IMG/VR virus record: IMGVR_UViG_3300036944_001289
Span: 62,001 to 126,000 of that record
Length of the DNA stretch: 64,000 bases
Strand: one strand, 5' to 3'
Shown here: one piece after another, positions 55,113 to 64,000 of the stretch
How the letters are laid out: each line of letters opens with the position of its first letter
Numbering within the stretch: the first letter of the stretch is position 1
Translations under genes and position numbers: made by a program
Notes under the pieces: model-generated
Databases searched by the model: none
The model's input: the letters and a program-made list of their open reading frames with translations, nothing else
What the model was told of the DNA's origin: nothing

Positions 55113-55982
55113 TTAAAATATTAAGAAATCAAATTTATAACCGTTTTCTTCTACACATTTCTTTTTTGCTAAATTTCTTTCCAAATCAATTTTAAATGTG
55201 TATTCACTTTTAACTTCAATTATTCTTTTTTCTTTAATTATAAAAATATCTGGATAATATCTATGCTCTTTACCATTATATGTATACGTAAAGGGAGGCA
55301 TGTTACATTTACCTGTTTCGATATCATCTTCTGTATAACCTTTAGCTAATAATAAATTAATTGCTTTATTTTCATAGCCTTGTGTTTTAAATTCCTTCTC
55401 TCCTACTATAAATGTTTTTATAGAAAAAGCGCTATTTTGTTGTTTTTCAAAATACTCTGCAACTTGCATAGGGTTAATAACTCCATACTCTTCTTTAAAT
55501 TTTTCTTGATATCTCTTTATTAATTCACCCCAACCATTATATTTTAATATAATGGTCTGTTTAAACAATTCGTTAGTAACATTTTTATAATTATATTGTT
55601 CTTTTCTGTTTCTTTTTTTAATACCATTTTCATTTAAAACTCTAATAATAACACAATTATCTACGCTGTATTTTTTGGATACATAATTGACACCCTTACC
55701 GTTGGAATACTCCTGAATAATATCTTTTATCTCATCTTCTGTAAATTTTTTGTAAATTGTATTGTTTCTTTTTTCATTATATCTTAATATGTTTCTGGAT
55801 TCTTTTTTATTACGTAACGAAACACCGTTTTTAATTATTATTTCTCTAATTACAGATACATTAACGGCATATAGGTTAGCAAGTTCTGACGCTGAGTAAC
55901 CTTCAATATAATTTATTATAATTTCTTTAGCTTTACCTTTTGTATTTTGATGCCTACTTTCATAAACAATATCTATGTTCAT
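55113..55982 (-). CDS. Free-standing PD-(D/E)XK endonuclease with HTH repeats (paralogue of 32565-33587)
   Basis: YGVINPMQ, QGYE, YYPDIF...IIEVKS; TAAATA-N5-ATG. Confidence 0.78.
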   Translation of the reverse strand: MNIDIVYESRHQNTKGKAKEIIINYIEGYSASELANLYAVNVSVIREIIIKNGVSLRNKKESRNILRYNEKRNNTIYKKFTEDEIKDIIQEYSNGKGVNYVSKKYSVDNCVIIRVLNENGIKKRNRKEQYNYKNVTNELFKQTIILKYNGWGELIKRYQEKFKEEYGVINPMQVAEYFEKQQNSAFSIKTFIVGEKEFKTQGYENKAINLLLAKGYTEDDIETGKCNMPPFTYTYNGKEHRYYPDIFIIKEKRIIEVKSEYTFKIDLERNLAKKKCVEENGYKFDFLIF

Positions 55983-56017
55983 ATATATATTTATTGTTTT
56001 GGTTATTGTATTCTTAA

Positions 56018-58042
56018 TTAATCAACAAAGTTTACACGTTTTGTTATTCCGTTATGCTTTTCAAGAAAGATTATATCTCCGTTTACAGCTTTTACACTCT
56101 CTTTTCTATGCGAGATAATTAAAATAGATTCTTTAAACGTTTCTACTCTTTCTTTTAGAATATCTACTACTAGCTCTACACCACGTTGGTCTAAGCTGGT
56201 ATCAAATAGTTCATCATATACAGTTACATTATAGTATACATCTCCGTGAGTCTTTCTCATATCAATAAATGAGAAAAGACATGCTAAATCAATAGCTTTT
56301 CTTTCTGCACCAGAGAAGTTATTATAAAGGCATATCTTACCTTTTTCGTTTAATATCTCTTCTTCAAAATACTCGTTAAATATGCATATACTATTACTAT
56401 CTAGCTTCTTGAGGTAGAATGCTAATTTTGCGTTAAAGTTTTGTAGAATTTTCTTTACTAGGAAACTCTTTACACCTTCTTCACTTATTACAAACTTTAC
56501 AACCTCAAGCATATCAGCTTTCTTTTTAAGACTTTGAATTGTATTATTGGATGTTTCTATCTTTGTATTTGCCTCTTTTATTAATTCATCAAAAGTCGTG
56601 ACATCGTTTGATATAGTTATGCTACCTTCTTGTAACTGTTTATTTAAATTCTGTAAATCTGTAATTCTTTTCTTATTTGACTGTCTTGTAGTTTCTTGCA
56701 CTGCTGCAAGCTTTATATCTTTATTAAGACTATCTATGTGTTTCTTTATTTTGGACTTTTTATCTTCTAAACCATTTGCCTCTTTTACATATGCAGATAA
56801 TGTCTCTACTAATTTTAGCACATCGTTATGCATATTTTTCTTTTCTTTTTCTATCTCCTCTATATCGTGTTCTGATATTGGACGTAAGCATGTAGGGCAA
56901 ATCTGTTCAGTAGTACCTACTTTTTGTAATTGCTCTTTTTTGGTTTTGATTTCGTTTTTTACTGTTGCTACATTTCCAAGTGTCTGATTGCATAGTTCTT
57001 CTACCTTAACCAAAGCCTTAGTATATTTTTCTAATTCTGTATTCTTTTCAGTCTGATTTATTATAACTTCATTTTGAATATCAGTTTCAATCTTTTGTAT
57101 CTCTGCCTCGTTATCTTTGATTTTTTTATTAATCGCTAATATCTTGGTCTCTTTTTCTTTAGACTTTAACTCCTTTTGCTTTTCAAAGGCAGATACACTG
57201 TTTTTAATTTCACTAAGTCTGGCATTTTCTATGTCTAGTTCTCTCTTTGTGCTGTTTTGGTCTTCTCTAAGAGAAGACATCATTGCAGAGAAAACCTGCA
57301 AATTGAATATTTGTTCAATAAACTTTCTTTTCTCTACTTTAGACTTTGACATGAAAGGTAGAGTATCATTTAATGTCATCAGTACACAATTTCTAAATAC
57401 TTCAGGTGATGATGATAGTACAGTTTCAATATACGAATTTGTATTTGCAATAGTATCTAATGTTATATCATTACCATCTTTATAAAGAAACAATCTAGAC
57501 GGTGATAATGTTCTTATTATGTTGTATGTGTTTGTATTACCGTTTTGATTAACATCGAATTCTAATTGCACTTCGCATGTATTTTGAGTTATATTGTTTG
57601 ATATAAACTCTTTCTTAAGTTCTCTTAATGTAGTACCAAATATAGCAAAGTATAATGCATCTGCTATAGTGGAATTGTGTGATGTAATACCGTTACTATA
57701 ATATTCCTTAACGTTTCTAACTTGCAAATCATATAAATTTTTAAATAAATTAGTACCTCTTACGTATTTTATAGTTTCACAACCGTCCTTTGTATGAACA
57801 ATTTCATTTACATTTAAATGTTGAACCTTTACAAACTCTACACCTGTAAATACTCTATGGTTACCTGAACATTTAAGGTTTTTTCCGGCATCAGTTTCAA
57901 TTTCATAAACTTGTTCATTGTATGCTGTTACATCTGCTTCATCGATAGGGTTAAACCCAAATCTTGTCTCTACATCAATATGACCTTTATATTGAGGATA
58001 TACTTTATAAAAATCAGCTATTTGTTTTACAGTAGCTTTCAT
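56018..58042 (-). CDS. gp46: gp46 (Rad50/SbcC) C-terminal precursor: 123-aa IntC plus C-extein
   Basis: Intein block B CSGNH, block F LYDLQV, block G YYSNGITSHN|S; then STIADAL, CPTC zinc hook, FSGAE signature, YDE, IISH. Confidence 0.92.
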   Translation of the reverse strand: MKATVKQIADFYKVYPQYKGHIDVETRFGFNPIDEADVTAYNEQVYEIETDAGKNLKCSGNHRVFTGVEFVKVQHLNVNEIVHTKDGCETIKYVRGTNLFKNLYDLQVRNVKEYYSNGITSHNSTIADALYFAIFGTTLRELKKEFISNNITQNTCEVQLEFDVNQNGNTNTYNIIRTLSPSRLFLYKDGNDITLDTIANTNSYIETVLSSSPEVFRNCVLMTLNDTLPFMSKSKVEKRKFIEQIFNLQVFSAMMSSLREDQNSTKRELDIENARLSEIKNSVSAFEKQKELKSKEKETKILAINKKIKDNEAEIQKIETDIQNEVIINQTEKNTELEKYTKALVKVEELCNQTLGNVATVKNEIKTKKEQLQKVGTTEQICPTCLRPISEHDIEEIEKEKKNMHNDVLKLVETLSAYVKEANGLEDKKSKIKKHIDSLNKDIKLAAVQETTRQSNKKRITDLQNLNKQLQEGSITISNDVTTFDELIKEANTKIETSNNTIQSLKKKADMLEVVKFVISEEGVKSFLVKKILQNFNAKLAFYLKKLDSNSICIFNEYFEEEILNEKGKICLYNNFSGAERKAIDLACLFSFIDMRKTHGDVYYNVTVYDELFDTSLDQRGVELVVDILKERVETFKESILIISHRKESVKAVNGDIIFLEKHNGITKRVNFVD
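57674..58042 (-). mobile_element. Split intein C-fragment (IntC, 123 aa)
   Basis: Ends in HN followed by Ser+1; contains block B, so the split site is atypical. Confidence 0.9.
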
Positions 58043-59095
58043 TAATTTCTTTTTTTATACTTTCTATTTGACTGTTATATGGTTTGTGTGACCAAAATTT
58101 AATAATATTATATCCATTGTCTTTAGCAATTAAATGTTTCTTTTTTTCATGTTCTATTTTTGATGTTATGGAGATGTTTTTATATGGGTATTTAAAATTT
58201 TTAATTTCATCATGTGACATAATTTCAGGATCTGGGTGAAATTCATATCTGTTGTATTCGATAATAATCTTAAGAGAAGATATTGTAAAATCAAAGTAAA
58301 ATATTTTTTTATTATCTCTTAATGAGAACTCCTTAGACCCTGTAATTCCTATCATGATATCATTACGTTGTATACCTAATTTCCTACAAAACTTATATAA
58401 AGGTATTAAAATCTTTAAACTTTCTTTAGAGGCTTTGCCGCGTTTCTTATATGTAATATATTTAAAATTATAATAGTGTGTGTTAAAATTTTCTGTTGTT
58501 TGTTCTATTTTGTTTTCTAAAATATACTTTTTTGTTTTGTGTATGATGTATTGATCTGAACCTTTTTGTACCCTAAATTTACAATAATCATCTAAATTAC
58601 AATTTCGTAATATAAACGACTCTAAACTATGTTGTTTAAGTTTGTTTATTAACTCAATTTCTTTACTACTTTTACAAAGTAATGTAATTTGCCACTTTTT
58701 CTGTCGGTTATTAAAAACTTTTAAACCTTCTAATTCTCCATACTTTTCAATACATTTTTTAAGTGAAAACGTAGACTGCCTTTCCTTAACCTTATTAATT
58801 GCATCTTGCGTTGTTAATCCTTTTTAACCCAATAACCAACTTGATTATTTCTCCAATCCTTTCGTCCTGTATTTTTGCTTTTACTTTTTTGCGATAATAT
58901 TTGTTGATGCTCTAATACTTTTTTAATAGCCTCATCTTCTGTATACCCTTTTTTAATCCAAAAGTACTTTGAGGATTTTCTAAATGAGCTTACATGCCTT
59001 TTTGCTTCTTCTTCTGTAAAAACTATTCCAGTATCAGGGTTGATTCTTTTTCTAGTTACCCAAAATTGCCATTGTTGTGGTGAATTGTAACTCAT
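58014..59095 (-). pseudogene. Vsr/DUF559-like homing endonuclease with a -1 frameshift at ~58820 (about 360 aa if restored)
   Basis: YWVKK|D* becomes YWVKKGLTTQDAINKV in the -1 frame, open to 58014; FYFDF...IIIEYN.YEFH...K...A..NGY.II.FW; own TAAATA-N5-ATG. Confidence 0.8.
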
Positions 59096-59103
59096 ATAAT
59101 TAT

Positions 59104-59337
59104 TTATTGATTCTCAATAAATTTTTTAAACTTTTCCAAAACCATTGCATCCTTTATTTGAATAGTTACTTCAGTCTGCGGATCAACACACTTACCTACA
59201 CCGTTTCTTCTGTCTTCCTTATCTCTATTAATACCGGTGATAATATTTAAACCTGTATTAAAGTCTAAACTAACCACATCATCACCTACTGATAGGAAGT
59301 TTTTTATCTTTATGTTTTTAAAGTTTACGTACTTCAT
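59104..59337 (-). CDS. gp46: gp46 N-terminal precursor: 49-aa N-extein plus 28-aa IntN
   Basis: IKNFLSVG...NIITGIN...NGVGK|CVDPQTEVTIQI...; ATGA-coupled to gp47. Confidence 0.92.
   Translation of the reverse strand: MKYVNFKNIKIKNFLSVGDDVVSLDFNTGLNIITGINRDKEDRRNGVGKCVDPQTEVTIQIKDAMVLEKFKKFIENQ
59107..59190 (-). mobile_element. Split intein N-fragment (IntN, 28 aa)
   Basis: Block A CVDPQTEV directly after the Walker A Lys. Confidence 0.88.
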
Positions 59338-62707: not shown

Positions 62708-62917
62708 ATGATAAGTTTTAAAAAATTCTATGCTATTTTTAAAGAAGATAGCTCTTACTCAGATGGTACATTAGGGCCTGCTGCAAATGTATCTCACAAT
62801 GCAATAGCCAATAGCGATTGGTATGCACCTGGTGACTATAGAATACCAAAAGGTGGTAGAGTATATAGACGCAGTGGTGTTGTAAAGCGTAAAAAGAGAC
62901 GTAAATACAAAAAATGA
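62708..62917 (+). CDS. Small basic late protein (69 aa)
   Basis: MISFKKFYAIFKED...KRKKRRKYKK; TATAAATA upstream. Confidence 0.6.
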   Translation: MISFKKFYAIFKEDSSYSDGTLGPAANVSHNAIANSDWYAPGDYRIPKGGRVYRRSGVVKRKKRRKYKK

Positions 62918-63339
62918 TAACAGATTTTGGTCATTGGATTAATTGCACATCATTAAATGTTGAGGAGTTACCCTATGGCTTTATCTATTTGATAGAGAAT
63001 AAAGTAACAAATAAAAAGTATATAGGTAAAAAACAAATTAAAAGTGTAAAAAAGCTTAAACCATTAAAAGGTAAGAAGAATAAAAGGCATTTTGACGTTG
63101 AGACAGATTGGAAGACTTATACATCTTCTTCTAATGAGGTTAATAGTGACATAGAAAAGTACGGAAAAGATAACTTTTCGTTCTCAATTATAAAATTTTG
63201 TGATTCTAAAAGTGAATTAGCATACTTTGAAGCAAAATTACAATTCGAAGAGAACGTACTATTACGTGAGGATTACTATAACGGTATCATAAATTTGAGA
63301 ATAGGTAAAAATTGTTTTATAAAAAAGTTGAAAACATAA
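62914..63339 (+). CDS. Small GIY-YIG-fold nuclease
   Basis: YGFIYLIEN...KYIGKK...WKTYTSS...E...YYN. Confidence 0.75.
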   Translation: MITDFGHWINCTSLNVEELPYGFIYLIENKVTNKKYIGKKQIKSVKKLKPLKGKKNKRHFDVETDWKTYTSSSNEVNSDIEKYGKDNFSFSIIKFCDSKSELAYFEAKLQFEENVLLREDYYNGIINLRIGKNCFIKKLKT

Positions 63340-63917: not shown

Positions 63918-63934
63918 TAAATATAAATATTATT

Positions 63935-64000
63935 ATGAGTATTTTCGATAAAAAAGCTAACCAGATCATTTCATCATTTTTATTAGAAGGTGTAGATTCC
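63935..64000 (+). CDS. Late protein, N-terminus only (runs off window end)
   Basis: TAAATA-N5-ATG; MSIFDKKANQIISSFLLEGVDS. Confidence 0.55.
   Translation, partial: MSIFDKKANQIISSFLLEGVDS

What the first reader, a model, noticed from the sequence alone, without database searches (positions are those of the whole stretch)
58014..59095. Decaying Vsr-like homing endonuclease between the two intein halves
Seen: an ORF with its own TAAATA-N5-ATG (overlapping the IntN stop) stops at TGG GTT AAA AAG GAT TAA. A -1 shift restores YWVKKGLTTQDAINKV, matching the earlier repeat YFWIKKGYTEDEAIKKV, and runs on to a D...E-x-x-x-x-x-F-H nuclease domain. The usual Gly of ExxG is Arg here (AGA, one change from GGA). 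Known: split intein plus intervening Vsr-like endonuclease is the 'fractured gene' architecture. Inference: two lesions suggest post-fixation decay, but A_AAG directly before a stop could also be a programmed -1 site. The nuclease 3' end overlaps the IntC start by 29 nt, so the frameshift could affect translational coupling and the IntN:IntC ratio.
Basis: partly seen in the sequence, partly recalled or inferred. Interest (0 to 1): 0.65.

Follow-up and report, generated by a model that had tools for sequence, protein, structure and literature searches.

The report
Frameshifted homing endonuclease in split gp46
A selfish DNA-cutting gene sits between the two halves of a split intein in a phage repair gene (gp46/Rad50); in this genome it has just lost one A from an A6 run, and sister phages carry the otherwise identical gene intact, so this is an ordinary, very young knockout and not long decay or a programmed frameshift.

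Summary
On the minus strand a 93-codon ORF (59095-58814) stops at AAG GAT TAA. The -1 frame then runs open for 269 codons to 58017 and restores a conserved WxKKG(Y/L)T..A repeat.

The joined 360-aa protein is a Vsr-like (EDxHD) homing endonuclease. It lies between a 28-aa IntN and a 123-aa IntC that split the Walker-A loop of gp46 (NGVGK|STIADA). This is the published "fractured gene" layout, in a host gene I did not find reported.

- **One lesion, not two.** Five metagenome contigs from three lineages carry the gene intact with A6 and 0-1 other differences. This genome, in contigs from two samples and one IMG/VR contig, has A5.
- **The "Gly to Arg" change is not damage.** The intact, evidently mobile alleles share it, as does a 59%-identical intact homologue at the same site.
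- **The cassette spread recently.** It differs by 0-0.46% between phages whose flanks differ by 5-9%.
- **No support for programmed frameshifting.** There is no canonical heptamer, no stimulatory structure and no conservation, and the stop is not adjacent to AAG.

Best reading: a real, very recent null or leaky one-base deletion.

The parts
59191..59337 (-). gp46 (Rad50/SbcC-like) N-extein, 49 aa, ending in Walker A ...NGVGK
   Evidence: ORF and translation. phrog_77 SbcC-like and AAA_23 hits. Uninterrupted 600-aa homologues read NGVGK|STIADA.
59104..59190 (-). IntN: 28 aa starting at Cys1 (59190-59188), plus the TAA stop. This is an unusually short N-half.
   Evidence: The blastn breakpoint against the empty-site locus L011 falls at 59192. 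The complex model places residues 47-77 of this chain against IntC: ipSAE 0.84, best control 0.00.
59102..59122 (-). 9-bp hairpin just upstream of the endonuclease start. Its 3' arm carries AATAAATA.
   Evidence: A hairpin at the same place but with a different sequence occurs in L009/L010, and a similar one in L008. This matches the hairpin plus late-promoter feature of fractured genes (PMC2677866).
59093..59106 (-). TAAATA-N5-ATG start motif of the endonuclease, overlapping the IntN stop
   Evidence: 20 matches in the window against 3.6 expected. 51 matches in the genome, of which 48 precede ORFs of 60 aa or more, and only at spacing 5.
58814..59095 (-). Endonuclease gene, part 1: 93-codon ORF (residues 1-92 of the intact protein, then Asp and stop). 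Helical N-terminal repeats.
58821..58825 (-). The lesion: A5 on the coding strand (T5 on +). Intact alleles have A6.
58014..58820 (-). Endonuclease gene, part 2 in the -1 frame: residues G93-S360 plus the TGA stop
   Evidence: phrog_22677 hit, E 7.6e-11.
58029..58430 (-). EDxHD / Vsr-like nuclease domain (residues 223-356). Includes E256, D269 (58292-58290), E280 (58259-58257), R283 (58250-58248), H287 (58238-58236) and E317.
   Evidence: AlphaFold2 model with pLDDT 92.7. 3R3P Z 9.4, rmsd 2.9 A, 95 of 97 residues; 1CW0 Z 9.1; 1VSR Z 8.7. Invariant columns.
58014..58042 (-). 29-nt overlap of the endonuclease's 3' end with the IntC start
   Evidence: The overlap is also 29 nt in L008 and 17 nt in L009. 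The published range is 6-69 bp.
57674..58042 (-). IntC: 123 aa ending in His-Asn. It contains all the splicing blocks except block A.
   Evidence: Weak Intein_splicing hit. Similar to contiguous terminase mini-inteins of Vibrio, Salmonella and Escherichia phages. Complex model.
56018..57673 (-). gp46 C-extein, 551 aa plus stop, beginning STIADA. Carries the CxxC zinc hook and the ABC signature.
   Evidence: phrog_77 E 8.3e-68. More than 3000 homologues; all but a few of the 120 listed are 599-603 aa.

Best explanation
**What is there.** The region holds a mobile cassette, IntN - free-standing EDxHD (Vsr-like) homing endonuclease gene (HEG) - IntC. It is inserted precisely between Lys and Ser of the Walker-A loop of the phage's gp46 (Rad50/SbcC-like) gene.

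**How it works (inferred).**
- The two gp46 pieces are rejoined by protein trans-splicing through an atypically split intein (28 + 123 aa).
- The endonuclease cuts intein-less gp46 alleles near NGVGK|STIADA during co-infection. Repair then copies the whole cassette in.

**The lesion.**
- This cassette spread recently through a clade of freshwater T4-like phages.
- In the lineage of this genome, replication slippage removed one A from an A6 run in a gene that is 46% A on its coding strand.
- Translation now stops after residue 92 plus Asp, before the nuclease domain.
- It is a very young loss-of-function allele, at most leaky through rare ribosome slippage on AAA-AAG. This is the first step expected once no empty target sites remain.

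**Shown:** the anatomy, fold and family, the intact A6 alleles, the A5 consensus in the source samples, the identity island and the empty-site allele.

**Inferred:** cleavage and homing activity, trans-splicing, loss of function, and the reason the lesion is tolerated.
For: **The lesion is one missing A.**
- Five loci (L001-L005) carry a 360-aa ORF with A6. The window, L006, L007 and L012 carry A5.
- Otherwise there are 0 (L003) or 1 synonymous (L001 group) differences in 1083 nt.

**It is real at consensus level.** Contigs of runs X1 (depth 262) and X2 (depth 17) show A5. Runs X3 and X4 from other studies show the extra base.

**The protein is a Vsr-like nuclease.**
- Top structural matches are the I-Bth0305I catalytic domain (Z 9.4) and Vsr (Z 9.1 and 8.7).
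- The profile's best PDB sequence hit is 3R3P.
- 9 of 41 family members hit DUF559.
- S223, E256, D269, E280, H287 and G328 are invariant.

**The cassette spread recently.** Over 1517 nt it differs by 0-0.46% between three lineages whose gp47/N-extein differ by 5.7-9.0%. Between the window and the other two lineages the C-extein differs by 4.8-5.0%. The boundary on the N side lies within 7-13 nt of the intein junction.

**The insertion is precise.**
- The syntenic locus L011 has an uninterrupted 600-aa gp46.
- Alignment to it breaks at 59192 and 57676.

**Long-term selection acts on the HEG.** Against the intact homologue in L008, dN is 0.35 with saturated synonymous sites (pS 0.76). The HEG and IntC are 59% identical between these phages while the C-extein is 44%.

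**No close relative has an empty site.** The nearest uninterrupted gp46 is 72% identical.

**The intein halves are modelled as a complex.** ipSAE 0.84 against a best control of 0.00. That mark was reached by 51 of 78 solved complexes and 2 of 108 mismatched pairs. The three runs agree in at least 85% of contacts, and partner pLDDT is at least 63.
Against: - Only assembled contigs were available, no raw reads, so a minority A6 sub-population in the source samples cannot be excluded.
- X1, X2, L006, L007 and L012 may all come from one sampling campaign, so the A5 allele may have been sampled only once in nature.
- Loss of function is inferred. P-site slippage of tRNA-Lys from AAG to AAA would produce exactly the intact protein, and its rate here is unknown.
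- The last catalytic acid is Glu317 where 37 of 41 relatives have Asp, and residue 283 is Arg where 35 of 41 have Gly. Activity even of the intact allele is therefore inferred from its recent spread, not measured.
- The identity island could in principle come from ordinary recombination rather than endonuclease-driven homing.
Confidence: 0.8

Rival explanations
1. Leaky or programmed -1 ribosomal frameshifting. Ribosomes slip on AAA-AAG and make a set fraction of full-length endonuclease, so the A5 allele is an attenuated but working gene.
For: A_AAG is a known shift-prone tetramer in bacteria (my own knowledge of dnaX and IS911-type sites). The -1 product would be identical to the intact protein. 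A stop lies two codons downstream.
Against: - The heptamer is T_AAA_AAG, so P-site re-pairing is poor.
- The stop is not adjacent, because GAT intervenes.
- No stable downstream structure is predicted: z -0.71, and 45 of 200 shuffles fold as well.
- The sequence around the site is identical in alleles that need no frameshift.
- All 120 listed homologues from the search are single ORFs, and only this lineage has A5.
Confidence: 0.08
2. Sequencing or assembly error in a homopolymer; the gene is really intact (A6) in this phage.
For: Homopolymer length is a classic error type. Near-identical intact alleles exist.
Against: A5 is the consensus in contigs of two runs from two samples, at depths 262 and 17. 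It is also the consensus in a separately assembled IMG/VR contig and in the 209-kb genome. A 5-versus-6 homopolymer is not error-prone at such depth with short-read data.
Confidence: 0.05
3. One reading: a long-fixed endonuclease gene in progressive decay that already carries two lesions, the frameshift and a catalytic-motif Gly to Arg change.
For: 35 of 41 relatives have Gly at position 283. No empty target site was seen in close relatives. The homing-cycle model predicts decay after fixation.
Against: - Arg283 is present in all the intact alleles and in the intact 59%-identical homologue P0002 at the same site. Asn or Ser occurs in other intact relatives.
- There are zero substitutions against L003 across 1517 nt.
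- The cassette is 10-20 times less diverged than its flanks, which points to recent spread, not old residence.
Confidence: 0.05

Closest known systems
Fractured genes (Dassa, London, Stoddard, Schueler-Furman, Pietrokovski 2009, PMC2677866)
   Same: [quoted passage not shown] There is a hairpin with a late-promoter-like element before the endonuclease start. The 3' end overlaps the IntC start by 29 nt (published range 6-69 bp). The setting is a phage.
   Different: The host gene is gp46/Rad50-SbcC. That paper mentions no gp46, Rad50 or SbcC, and I found no report in the held library. The intein is split after about 28 residues rather than 88-105. This copy carries a frameshift.
I-Bth0305I, prototype of the EDxHD homing endonuclease family (Taylor et al. 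2011, PMC3239194; PDB 3R3P)
   Same: It is the best structural match: Z 9.4, 95 of 97 residues, rmsd 2.9 A. By motif spacing, D269, N282, H287 and E317 correspond to D196, N208, H213 and D222. Both have a multidomain layout with an N-terminal DNA-binding region and a C-terminal nuclease.
   Different: I-Bth0305I is encoded in a group I intron in recA, whereas this gene stands free between intein halves. There is an insertion of about 20 residues between His and the last acid. The last acid is Glu rather than Asp, and Arg follows the Asn. Sequence identity is only about 13%.
Aeromonas phage split DNA polymerase with an intervening 'putative VSR endonuclease' (Aes508, Aes123, AS-gz)
   Same: A homologous endonuclease, 26% identical over 98% of the C-terminal part, lies between split-intein halves of a T4-like replication gene.
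   Different: The host gene is different (gp43), as is the intein (the cysteine-less PolB1 intein described in PMC11923092).
Atypically split inteins of the Terminase / AceL-TerL type
   Same: A very short IntN and a long IntC that carries every block except A. Dassa 2009 notes a terminase intein with a 122-residue C part. IntC here is most similar to terminase mini-inteins.
   Different: The host protein is gp46. Splicing was not tested.
dnaX / IS911-type -1 frameshift sites (A_AAA_AAG)
   Same: AAA-AAG lysine codons at the shift point.
   Different: The first base of the heptamer is missing, there is no stimulator, there is no conservation, and relatives are in frame.

Membership tests
EDxHD / Vsr-like homing endonucleases | Vsr-like (PD-(D/E)xK-derived) nuclease fold in the C-terminal domain | tested here: met
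   AlphaFold2 model with pLDDT 92.7. 3R3P Z 9.4, 1CW0 Z 9.1 and 1VSR Z 8.7 are the top three matches. Foldseek probability 0.96-0.99.
EDxHD / Vsr-like homing endonucleases | Conserved catalytic residues: Glu, Asp, His and Asp, plus the family's invariant Glu at the position of Vsr Phe62 | tested here: met
   E256, D269, E280 and H287 are invariant in all 41 sequences. The last acid is E317, where 37 of 41 have Asp, a conservative change shared with P0002. The residue mapping rests on motif spacing and partial alignments.
EDxHD / Vsr-like homing endonucleases | Site-specific double-strand cleavage next to its own insertion site | not testable with these tools
   Indirect only: the cassette is nearly identical in diverged genomes, and a precise empty site exists in L011.
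Fractured gene | One conserved enzyme gene split into two ORFs that end and begin with split-intein halves | tested here: met
   49-aa N-extein plus 28-aa IntN, then 123-aa IntC plus 551-aa C-extein. The exteins sum to the 600 aa of uninterrupted homologues.
Fractured gene | A free-standing endonuclease gene between the halves, with its own start signals and a 3' overlap with the IntC ORF | tested here: met
Split intein (trans-splicing) | Cys1, a block-B His, terminal His-Asn and a +1 nucleophile | tested here: met
   Cys at 59190-59188, an SGNH motif in IntC, and ...SHN|S at the junction. By sequence only.
Split intein (trans-splicing) | The two halves associate and splice | tested here: inconclusive
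   The complex model supports association: ipSAE 0.84 against a best control of 0.00. That mark was reached by 51 of 78 solved complexes and 2 of 108 mismatched pairs. The runs agree in at least 85% of contacts, and partner pLDDT is at least 63. Similar complexes are solved, so the pass may partly reflect memory. Splicing itself is not testable here.
Programmed -1 ribosomal frameshift site | Slippery heptamer X_XXY_YYZ | tested here: not met
   The zero-frame sequence is GTT AAA AAG, giving T_AAA_AAG.
Programmed -1 ribosomal frameshift site | A stimulatory downstream structure or upstream SD-like element | tested here: not met
   Minimum free energy -14 kcal/mol, z -0.71. No SD-like run upstream.
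Programmed -1 ribosomal frameshift site | Two-frame arrangement conserved in relatives | tested here: not met
   The nearest alleles have A6 in one frame. More distant homologues are single ORFs of 341-364 aa.
Decayed pseudogene | Several independent disabling lesions or relaxed constraint | tested here: not met
   One indel and 0 substitutions against L003. Arg283 is not lineage-specific damage.

The most novel reading that the evidence does not exclude
The A5 allele is not dead but attenuated. Rare tRNA-Lys slippage on AAA-AAG makes a trickle of full-length endonuclease, while most ribosomes stop 770 nt before the IntC start. That would uncouple IntC-gp46 translation from endonuclease translation. 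The one-base change would then be a selected dial on both endonuclease dose and the IntN:IntC ratio of an essential recombination protein.
Probability: 0.07. Interest if true: 0.55.

Novelty: new member of a known kind. Interest (0 to 1): 0.35.

Why it matters
- It adds gp46/Rad50 to the enzymes known to be "fractured" by a split intein plus a Vsr-like endonuclease.
- It adds a natural intein split after only 28 residues. Short N-fragments are sought for protein semi-synthesis.
- It gives an unusually clean natural snapshot of the homing cycle. The same cassette is seen intact and nearly identical in diverged genomes (recent invasion), absent from a syntenic relative (the empty target), and freshly knocked out by one base in one lineage.

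The frameshift itself is an ordinary mutation and is no evidence of a new recoding mechanism.

Tried and rejected
- **megablast against phage records** found nothing. The closest cultured phages share only about 26-28% identity in gp46.
- **Pfam** gave no hit for either part of the endonuclease or for the intact protein. The family assignment therefore rests on PHROG, the profile search, the fold and transitive DUF559 hits.
- **Foldseek E-values** with the whole model were weak (0.1-0.2). The VIA-align second look gave clear Z-scores.
- **tblastn of the genome** found no second copy of this endonuclease.
- **Raw reads** were not available. All 14 runs are held as contigs, so allele frequencies within the source sample could not be measured.
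- **Folding around the shift site** gave nothing above shuffles.
- **The 113-aa downstream ORF** (58355-58014), which gene callers report, starts at M248. It lacks invariant S223 and the first helix of the nuclease domain, so I did not accept it as a working stand-alone nuclease.
- **Literature searches** for a gp46/Rad50 split intein and for leaderless T4-type late genes returned nothing relevant in the held library. This is not proof of absence.
Full report
**Setting.** The window lies in a single 209,282-bp contig of 33% G+C. It is a T4-like phage genome, distant from cultured phages: gp46 is about 26-28% identical to the nearest cyanophage and pelagiphage proteins. All genes discussed are on the minus strand. 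In order they are:
- gp47/Mre11-like, 60404-59334
- a 77-aa ORF, 59337-59104
- the finding, 59095-58014
- a 674-aa ORF, 58042-56018

**The observation.**
- The 93-codon ORF from ATG 59095 ends ...TGG GTT AAA AAG GAT TAA, with the stop at 58816-58814.
- The -1 frame is then open for 269 codons down to 58017, in a region where the other frames are full of stops.
- Reading K92 and then G93 in the -1 frame gives YWVKKGLTTQDAINKV. This copies the earlier YFWIKKGYTEDEAIKKV and matches a conserved family motif, with G93 in 37 of 41 relatives.
- The one inaccuracy is that a GAT codon separates AAG from the stop.

**What the gene is.**
- The C-terminal part hits phrog_22677, a profile of about 353 positions (E 7.6e-11).
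- It also hits the 'putative VSR endonuclease' genes that sit between the split-intein halves of Aeromonas phage DNA polymerases (26% identity over 98% of the C-terminal part).
- A word-based protein search found 159 relatives, mostly 340-440 aa.
- An AlphaFold2 model of the intact 360-aa protein, built on 41 relatives, has pLDDT 92.7.
- The best structural matches of residues 223-356 are the catalytic domain of I-Bth0305I (3R3P: Z 9.4, rmsd 2.9 A, 95 of 97 residues) and E. coli Vsr (1CW0: Z 9.1; 1VSR: Z 8.7). 3R3P is also the top sequence-profile hit in the PDB, though weakly (E 0.063).
- S223, E256, D269, E280, H287 and G328 are invariant. This fits the EDxHD/Vsr active site described in PMC3239194 and the extra invariant Glu noted in PMC2677866.

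**The host gene and intein.**
- The 77-aa ORF is the first 49 residues of gp46 (Rad50/SbcC-like), ending NGVGK, followed by 28 residues that begin with Cys.
- The 674-aa ORF begins with 123 residues ending His-Asn, followed by STIADA... and a 551-aa Rad50-like body (phrog_77, E 8e-68).
- Uninterrupted homologues are 600 aa, which equals 49 + 551, and they are the rule.
- One of them, L011, has the same gene order as the window. It reads NGVGK|STIADA without interruption, and its DNA alignment to the window breaks at 59192 and 57676.
- The cassette is therefore a precise 1517-nt insertion in the Walker-A loop.
- The intein is split after only 28 residues, like the unusual terminase intein in PMC2677866. 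IntC is most similar to terminase mini-inteins.
- A complex model supports association of the halves. ipSAE is 0.84 against a best control of 0.00. That mark was reached by 51 of 78 solved complexes and 2 of 108 mismatched pairs. The runs agree in at least 85% of contacts, and partner pLDDT is at least 63. This supports binding but does not prove it, and similar complexes are solved.

**The frameshift is one missing A, and it is young.**
- The search returned an intact 360-aa protein that is 100% identical to the -1 frame part (P0001). Its 90% cluster holds three 360-aa members together with the 93-aa and 113-aa fragments of the broken form.
- Five contigs from different samples and assemblers (L001-L005) encode it with GTT AAA AAA GGA. 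The window, L006, L007 and L012 read GTT AAA AAG GA.
- Apart from that base, the 1083-nt gene differs at 0 positions from L003 and at one synonymous position from the L001 group.
- Laying public runs on the region gave A5 in the contigs of two shale-gas metagenome runs, at k-mer depth 262 and 17. These are probably the source. Two runs from other studies carried the extra base.
- These are contigs, not reads, so a minority allele cannot be excluded. A consensus error is very unlikely.
- The coding strand is 46% A, with 17 runs of five or more A. A one-base slip is the most expected kind of mutation here.

**The cassette spread recently.**
- Three lineages were compared: the window, the L001 group and L003.
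- gp47 plus the N-extein differ by 5.7-9.0% between the three lineages.
- The C-extein differs by 4.8-5.0% between the window and the other two lineages.
- The 1517-nt cassette differs by 0-0.46%.
- On the N side, differences stop 7-13 nt before the Cys1 codon. On the C side they resume about 100 nt into the extein.
- Against a much more distant phage (L008) that carries an intact homologue at the same site, the endonuclease and IntC are 59% identical while the C-extein is 44%. dN is 0.35 with saturated synonymous sites.
- A 72%-identical relative lacks the cassette.
- Patchy distribution, lower divergence than the host gene and sharp boundaries are the marks of a mobile, selected element, not an old pseudogene.
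- All sampled close relatives carry it, so empty targets may now be scarce. That would make a fresh null allele tolerable, as the homing-cycle model predicts (my own knowledge).

**The second 'lesion'.**
- Residue 283 (AGA) follows N282, which by spacing corresponds to I-Bth0305I N208.
- 35 of 41 relatives have Gly there. Arg is shared by every intact allele and by P0002 in L008. Asn or Ser occurs in four other intact relatives.
- It is a clade trait compatible with recent spread, not decay.

**Programmed frameshifting.**
- The zero-frame heptamer is T_AAA_AAG, not X_XXY_YYZ.
- The stop is not adjacent to AAG.
- The 106-nt context folds no better than shuffles (z -0.71).
- The flanking sequence is identical in alleles that need no shift.
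- No relative has the two-frame arrangement.
- Low-level slippage of tRNA-Lys from AAG to AAA would produce the intact protein, so the allele may be slightly leaky. I rate a functional recoding role at under 10%.

**Expression signals.**
- TAAATA-N5-ATG before the endonuclease is a genome-wide start signal. There are 20 matches in the window against 3.6 expected, and 51 in the genome. Of those, 48 precede ORFs of 60 aa or more, and the enrichment is seen only at spacing 5.
- A 9-bp hairpin ends just upstream (59122-59102). It recurs with a different sequence in L009/L010. This matches the hairpin plus late-promoter feature of fractured genes.
- IntC has no such motif and starts inside the endonuclease ORF. 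Premature termination 770 nt upstream could therefore lower IntC-gp46 translation. This is plausible but untested.

**Verdict.** This is a known architecture in a host gene I did not find reported, with an atypical split point. It carries a single, real, very recent one-base deletion. The 'two lesions / decaying' and 'programmed -1' readings are not supported.

Noticed in passing
whole genome; in the window e.g. 59093-59106 (-), 55980-55993 (-), 63924-63937 (+): (A/T)TAAATA-N5-ATG with a strict 5-nt spacer occurs 51 times in the 209-kb genome, and 48 of these precede ORFs of 60 aa or more. Other spacings show no such enrichment. The motif matches 6-7 of the 8 bases of the T4 late promoter TATAAATA. 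If the T4 spacing holds, transcription would start at the A of the ATG, giving leaderless late mRNAs. It could instead be a non-SD translation signal.
   Followed up: partly
window 55113-55982 (-): A 289-aa DUF7487 protein (E 1.5e-26) with a weak TnsA-like endonuclease hit lies just downstream of gp46. It looks like a second free-standing homing endonuclease. It is present in the window and in the empty-site relative L011, but absent from L001, L002 and L004, where about 100 nt replace about 1 kb.
   Followed up: partly
window 59104-59190 and 57674-58042 (-): The intein is naturally split after only 28 residues, with a 123-aa IntC, Cys1 and Ser+1. This is the same unusual split point as the terminase (AceL-TerL-type) inteins. 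It could interest protein-ligation work.
   Followed up: partly
window 62914-63339 (+): A 141-aa GIY-YIG (SegE-like) endonuclease gene, a third homing-type nuclease within 9 kb.
   Followed up: no
window 58640-58790 (-), residues about 104-150 of the joined protein: A helical module (ERQSTFSLKKCIEKYGE.EG...RQKKWQ) is 56-69% identical to segments of many proteins. Several of these carry other nuclease domains (DUF559, MTES_1575) or zinc fingers, and Caulobacter phage Cr30 has such a segment. It looks like a shuffled DNA-binding module.
   Followed up: no
L001 vs L003, region matching window 57673-56644: These two lineages differ by 5.7% in gp47 but only 0.39% in the gp46 C-extein. The near-identity tract extends at least 1 kb beyond the cassette on that side, which suggests long co-conversion or a separate recombination event.
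   Followed up: no
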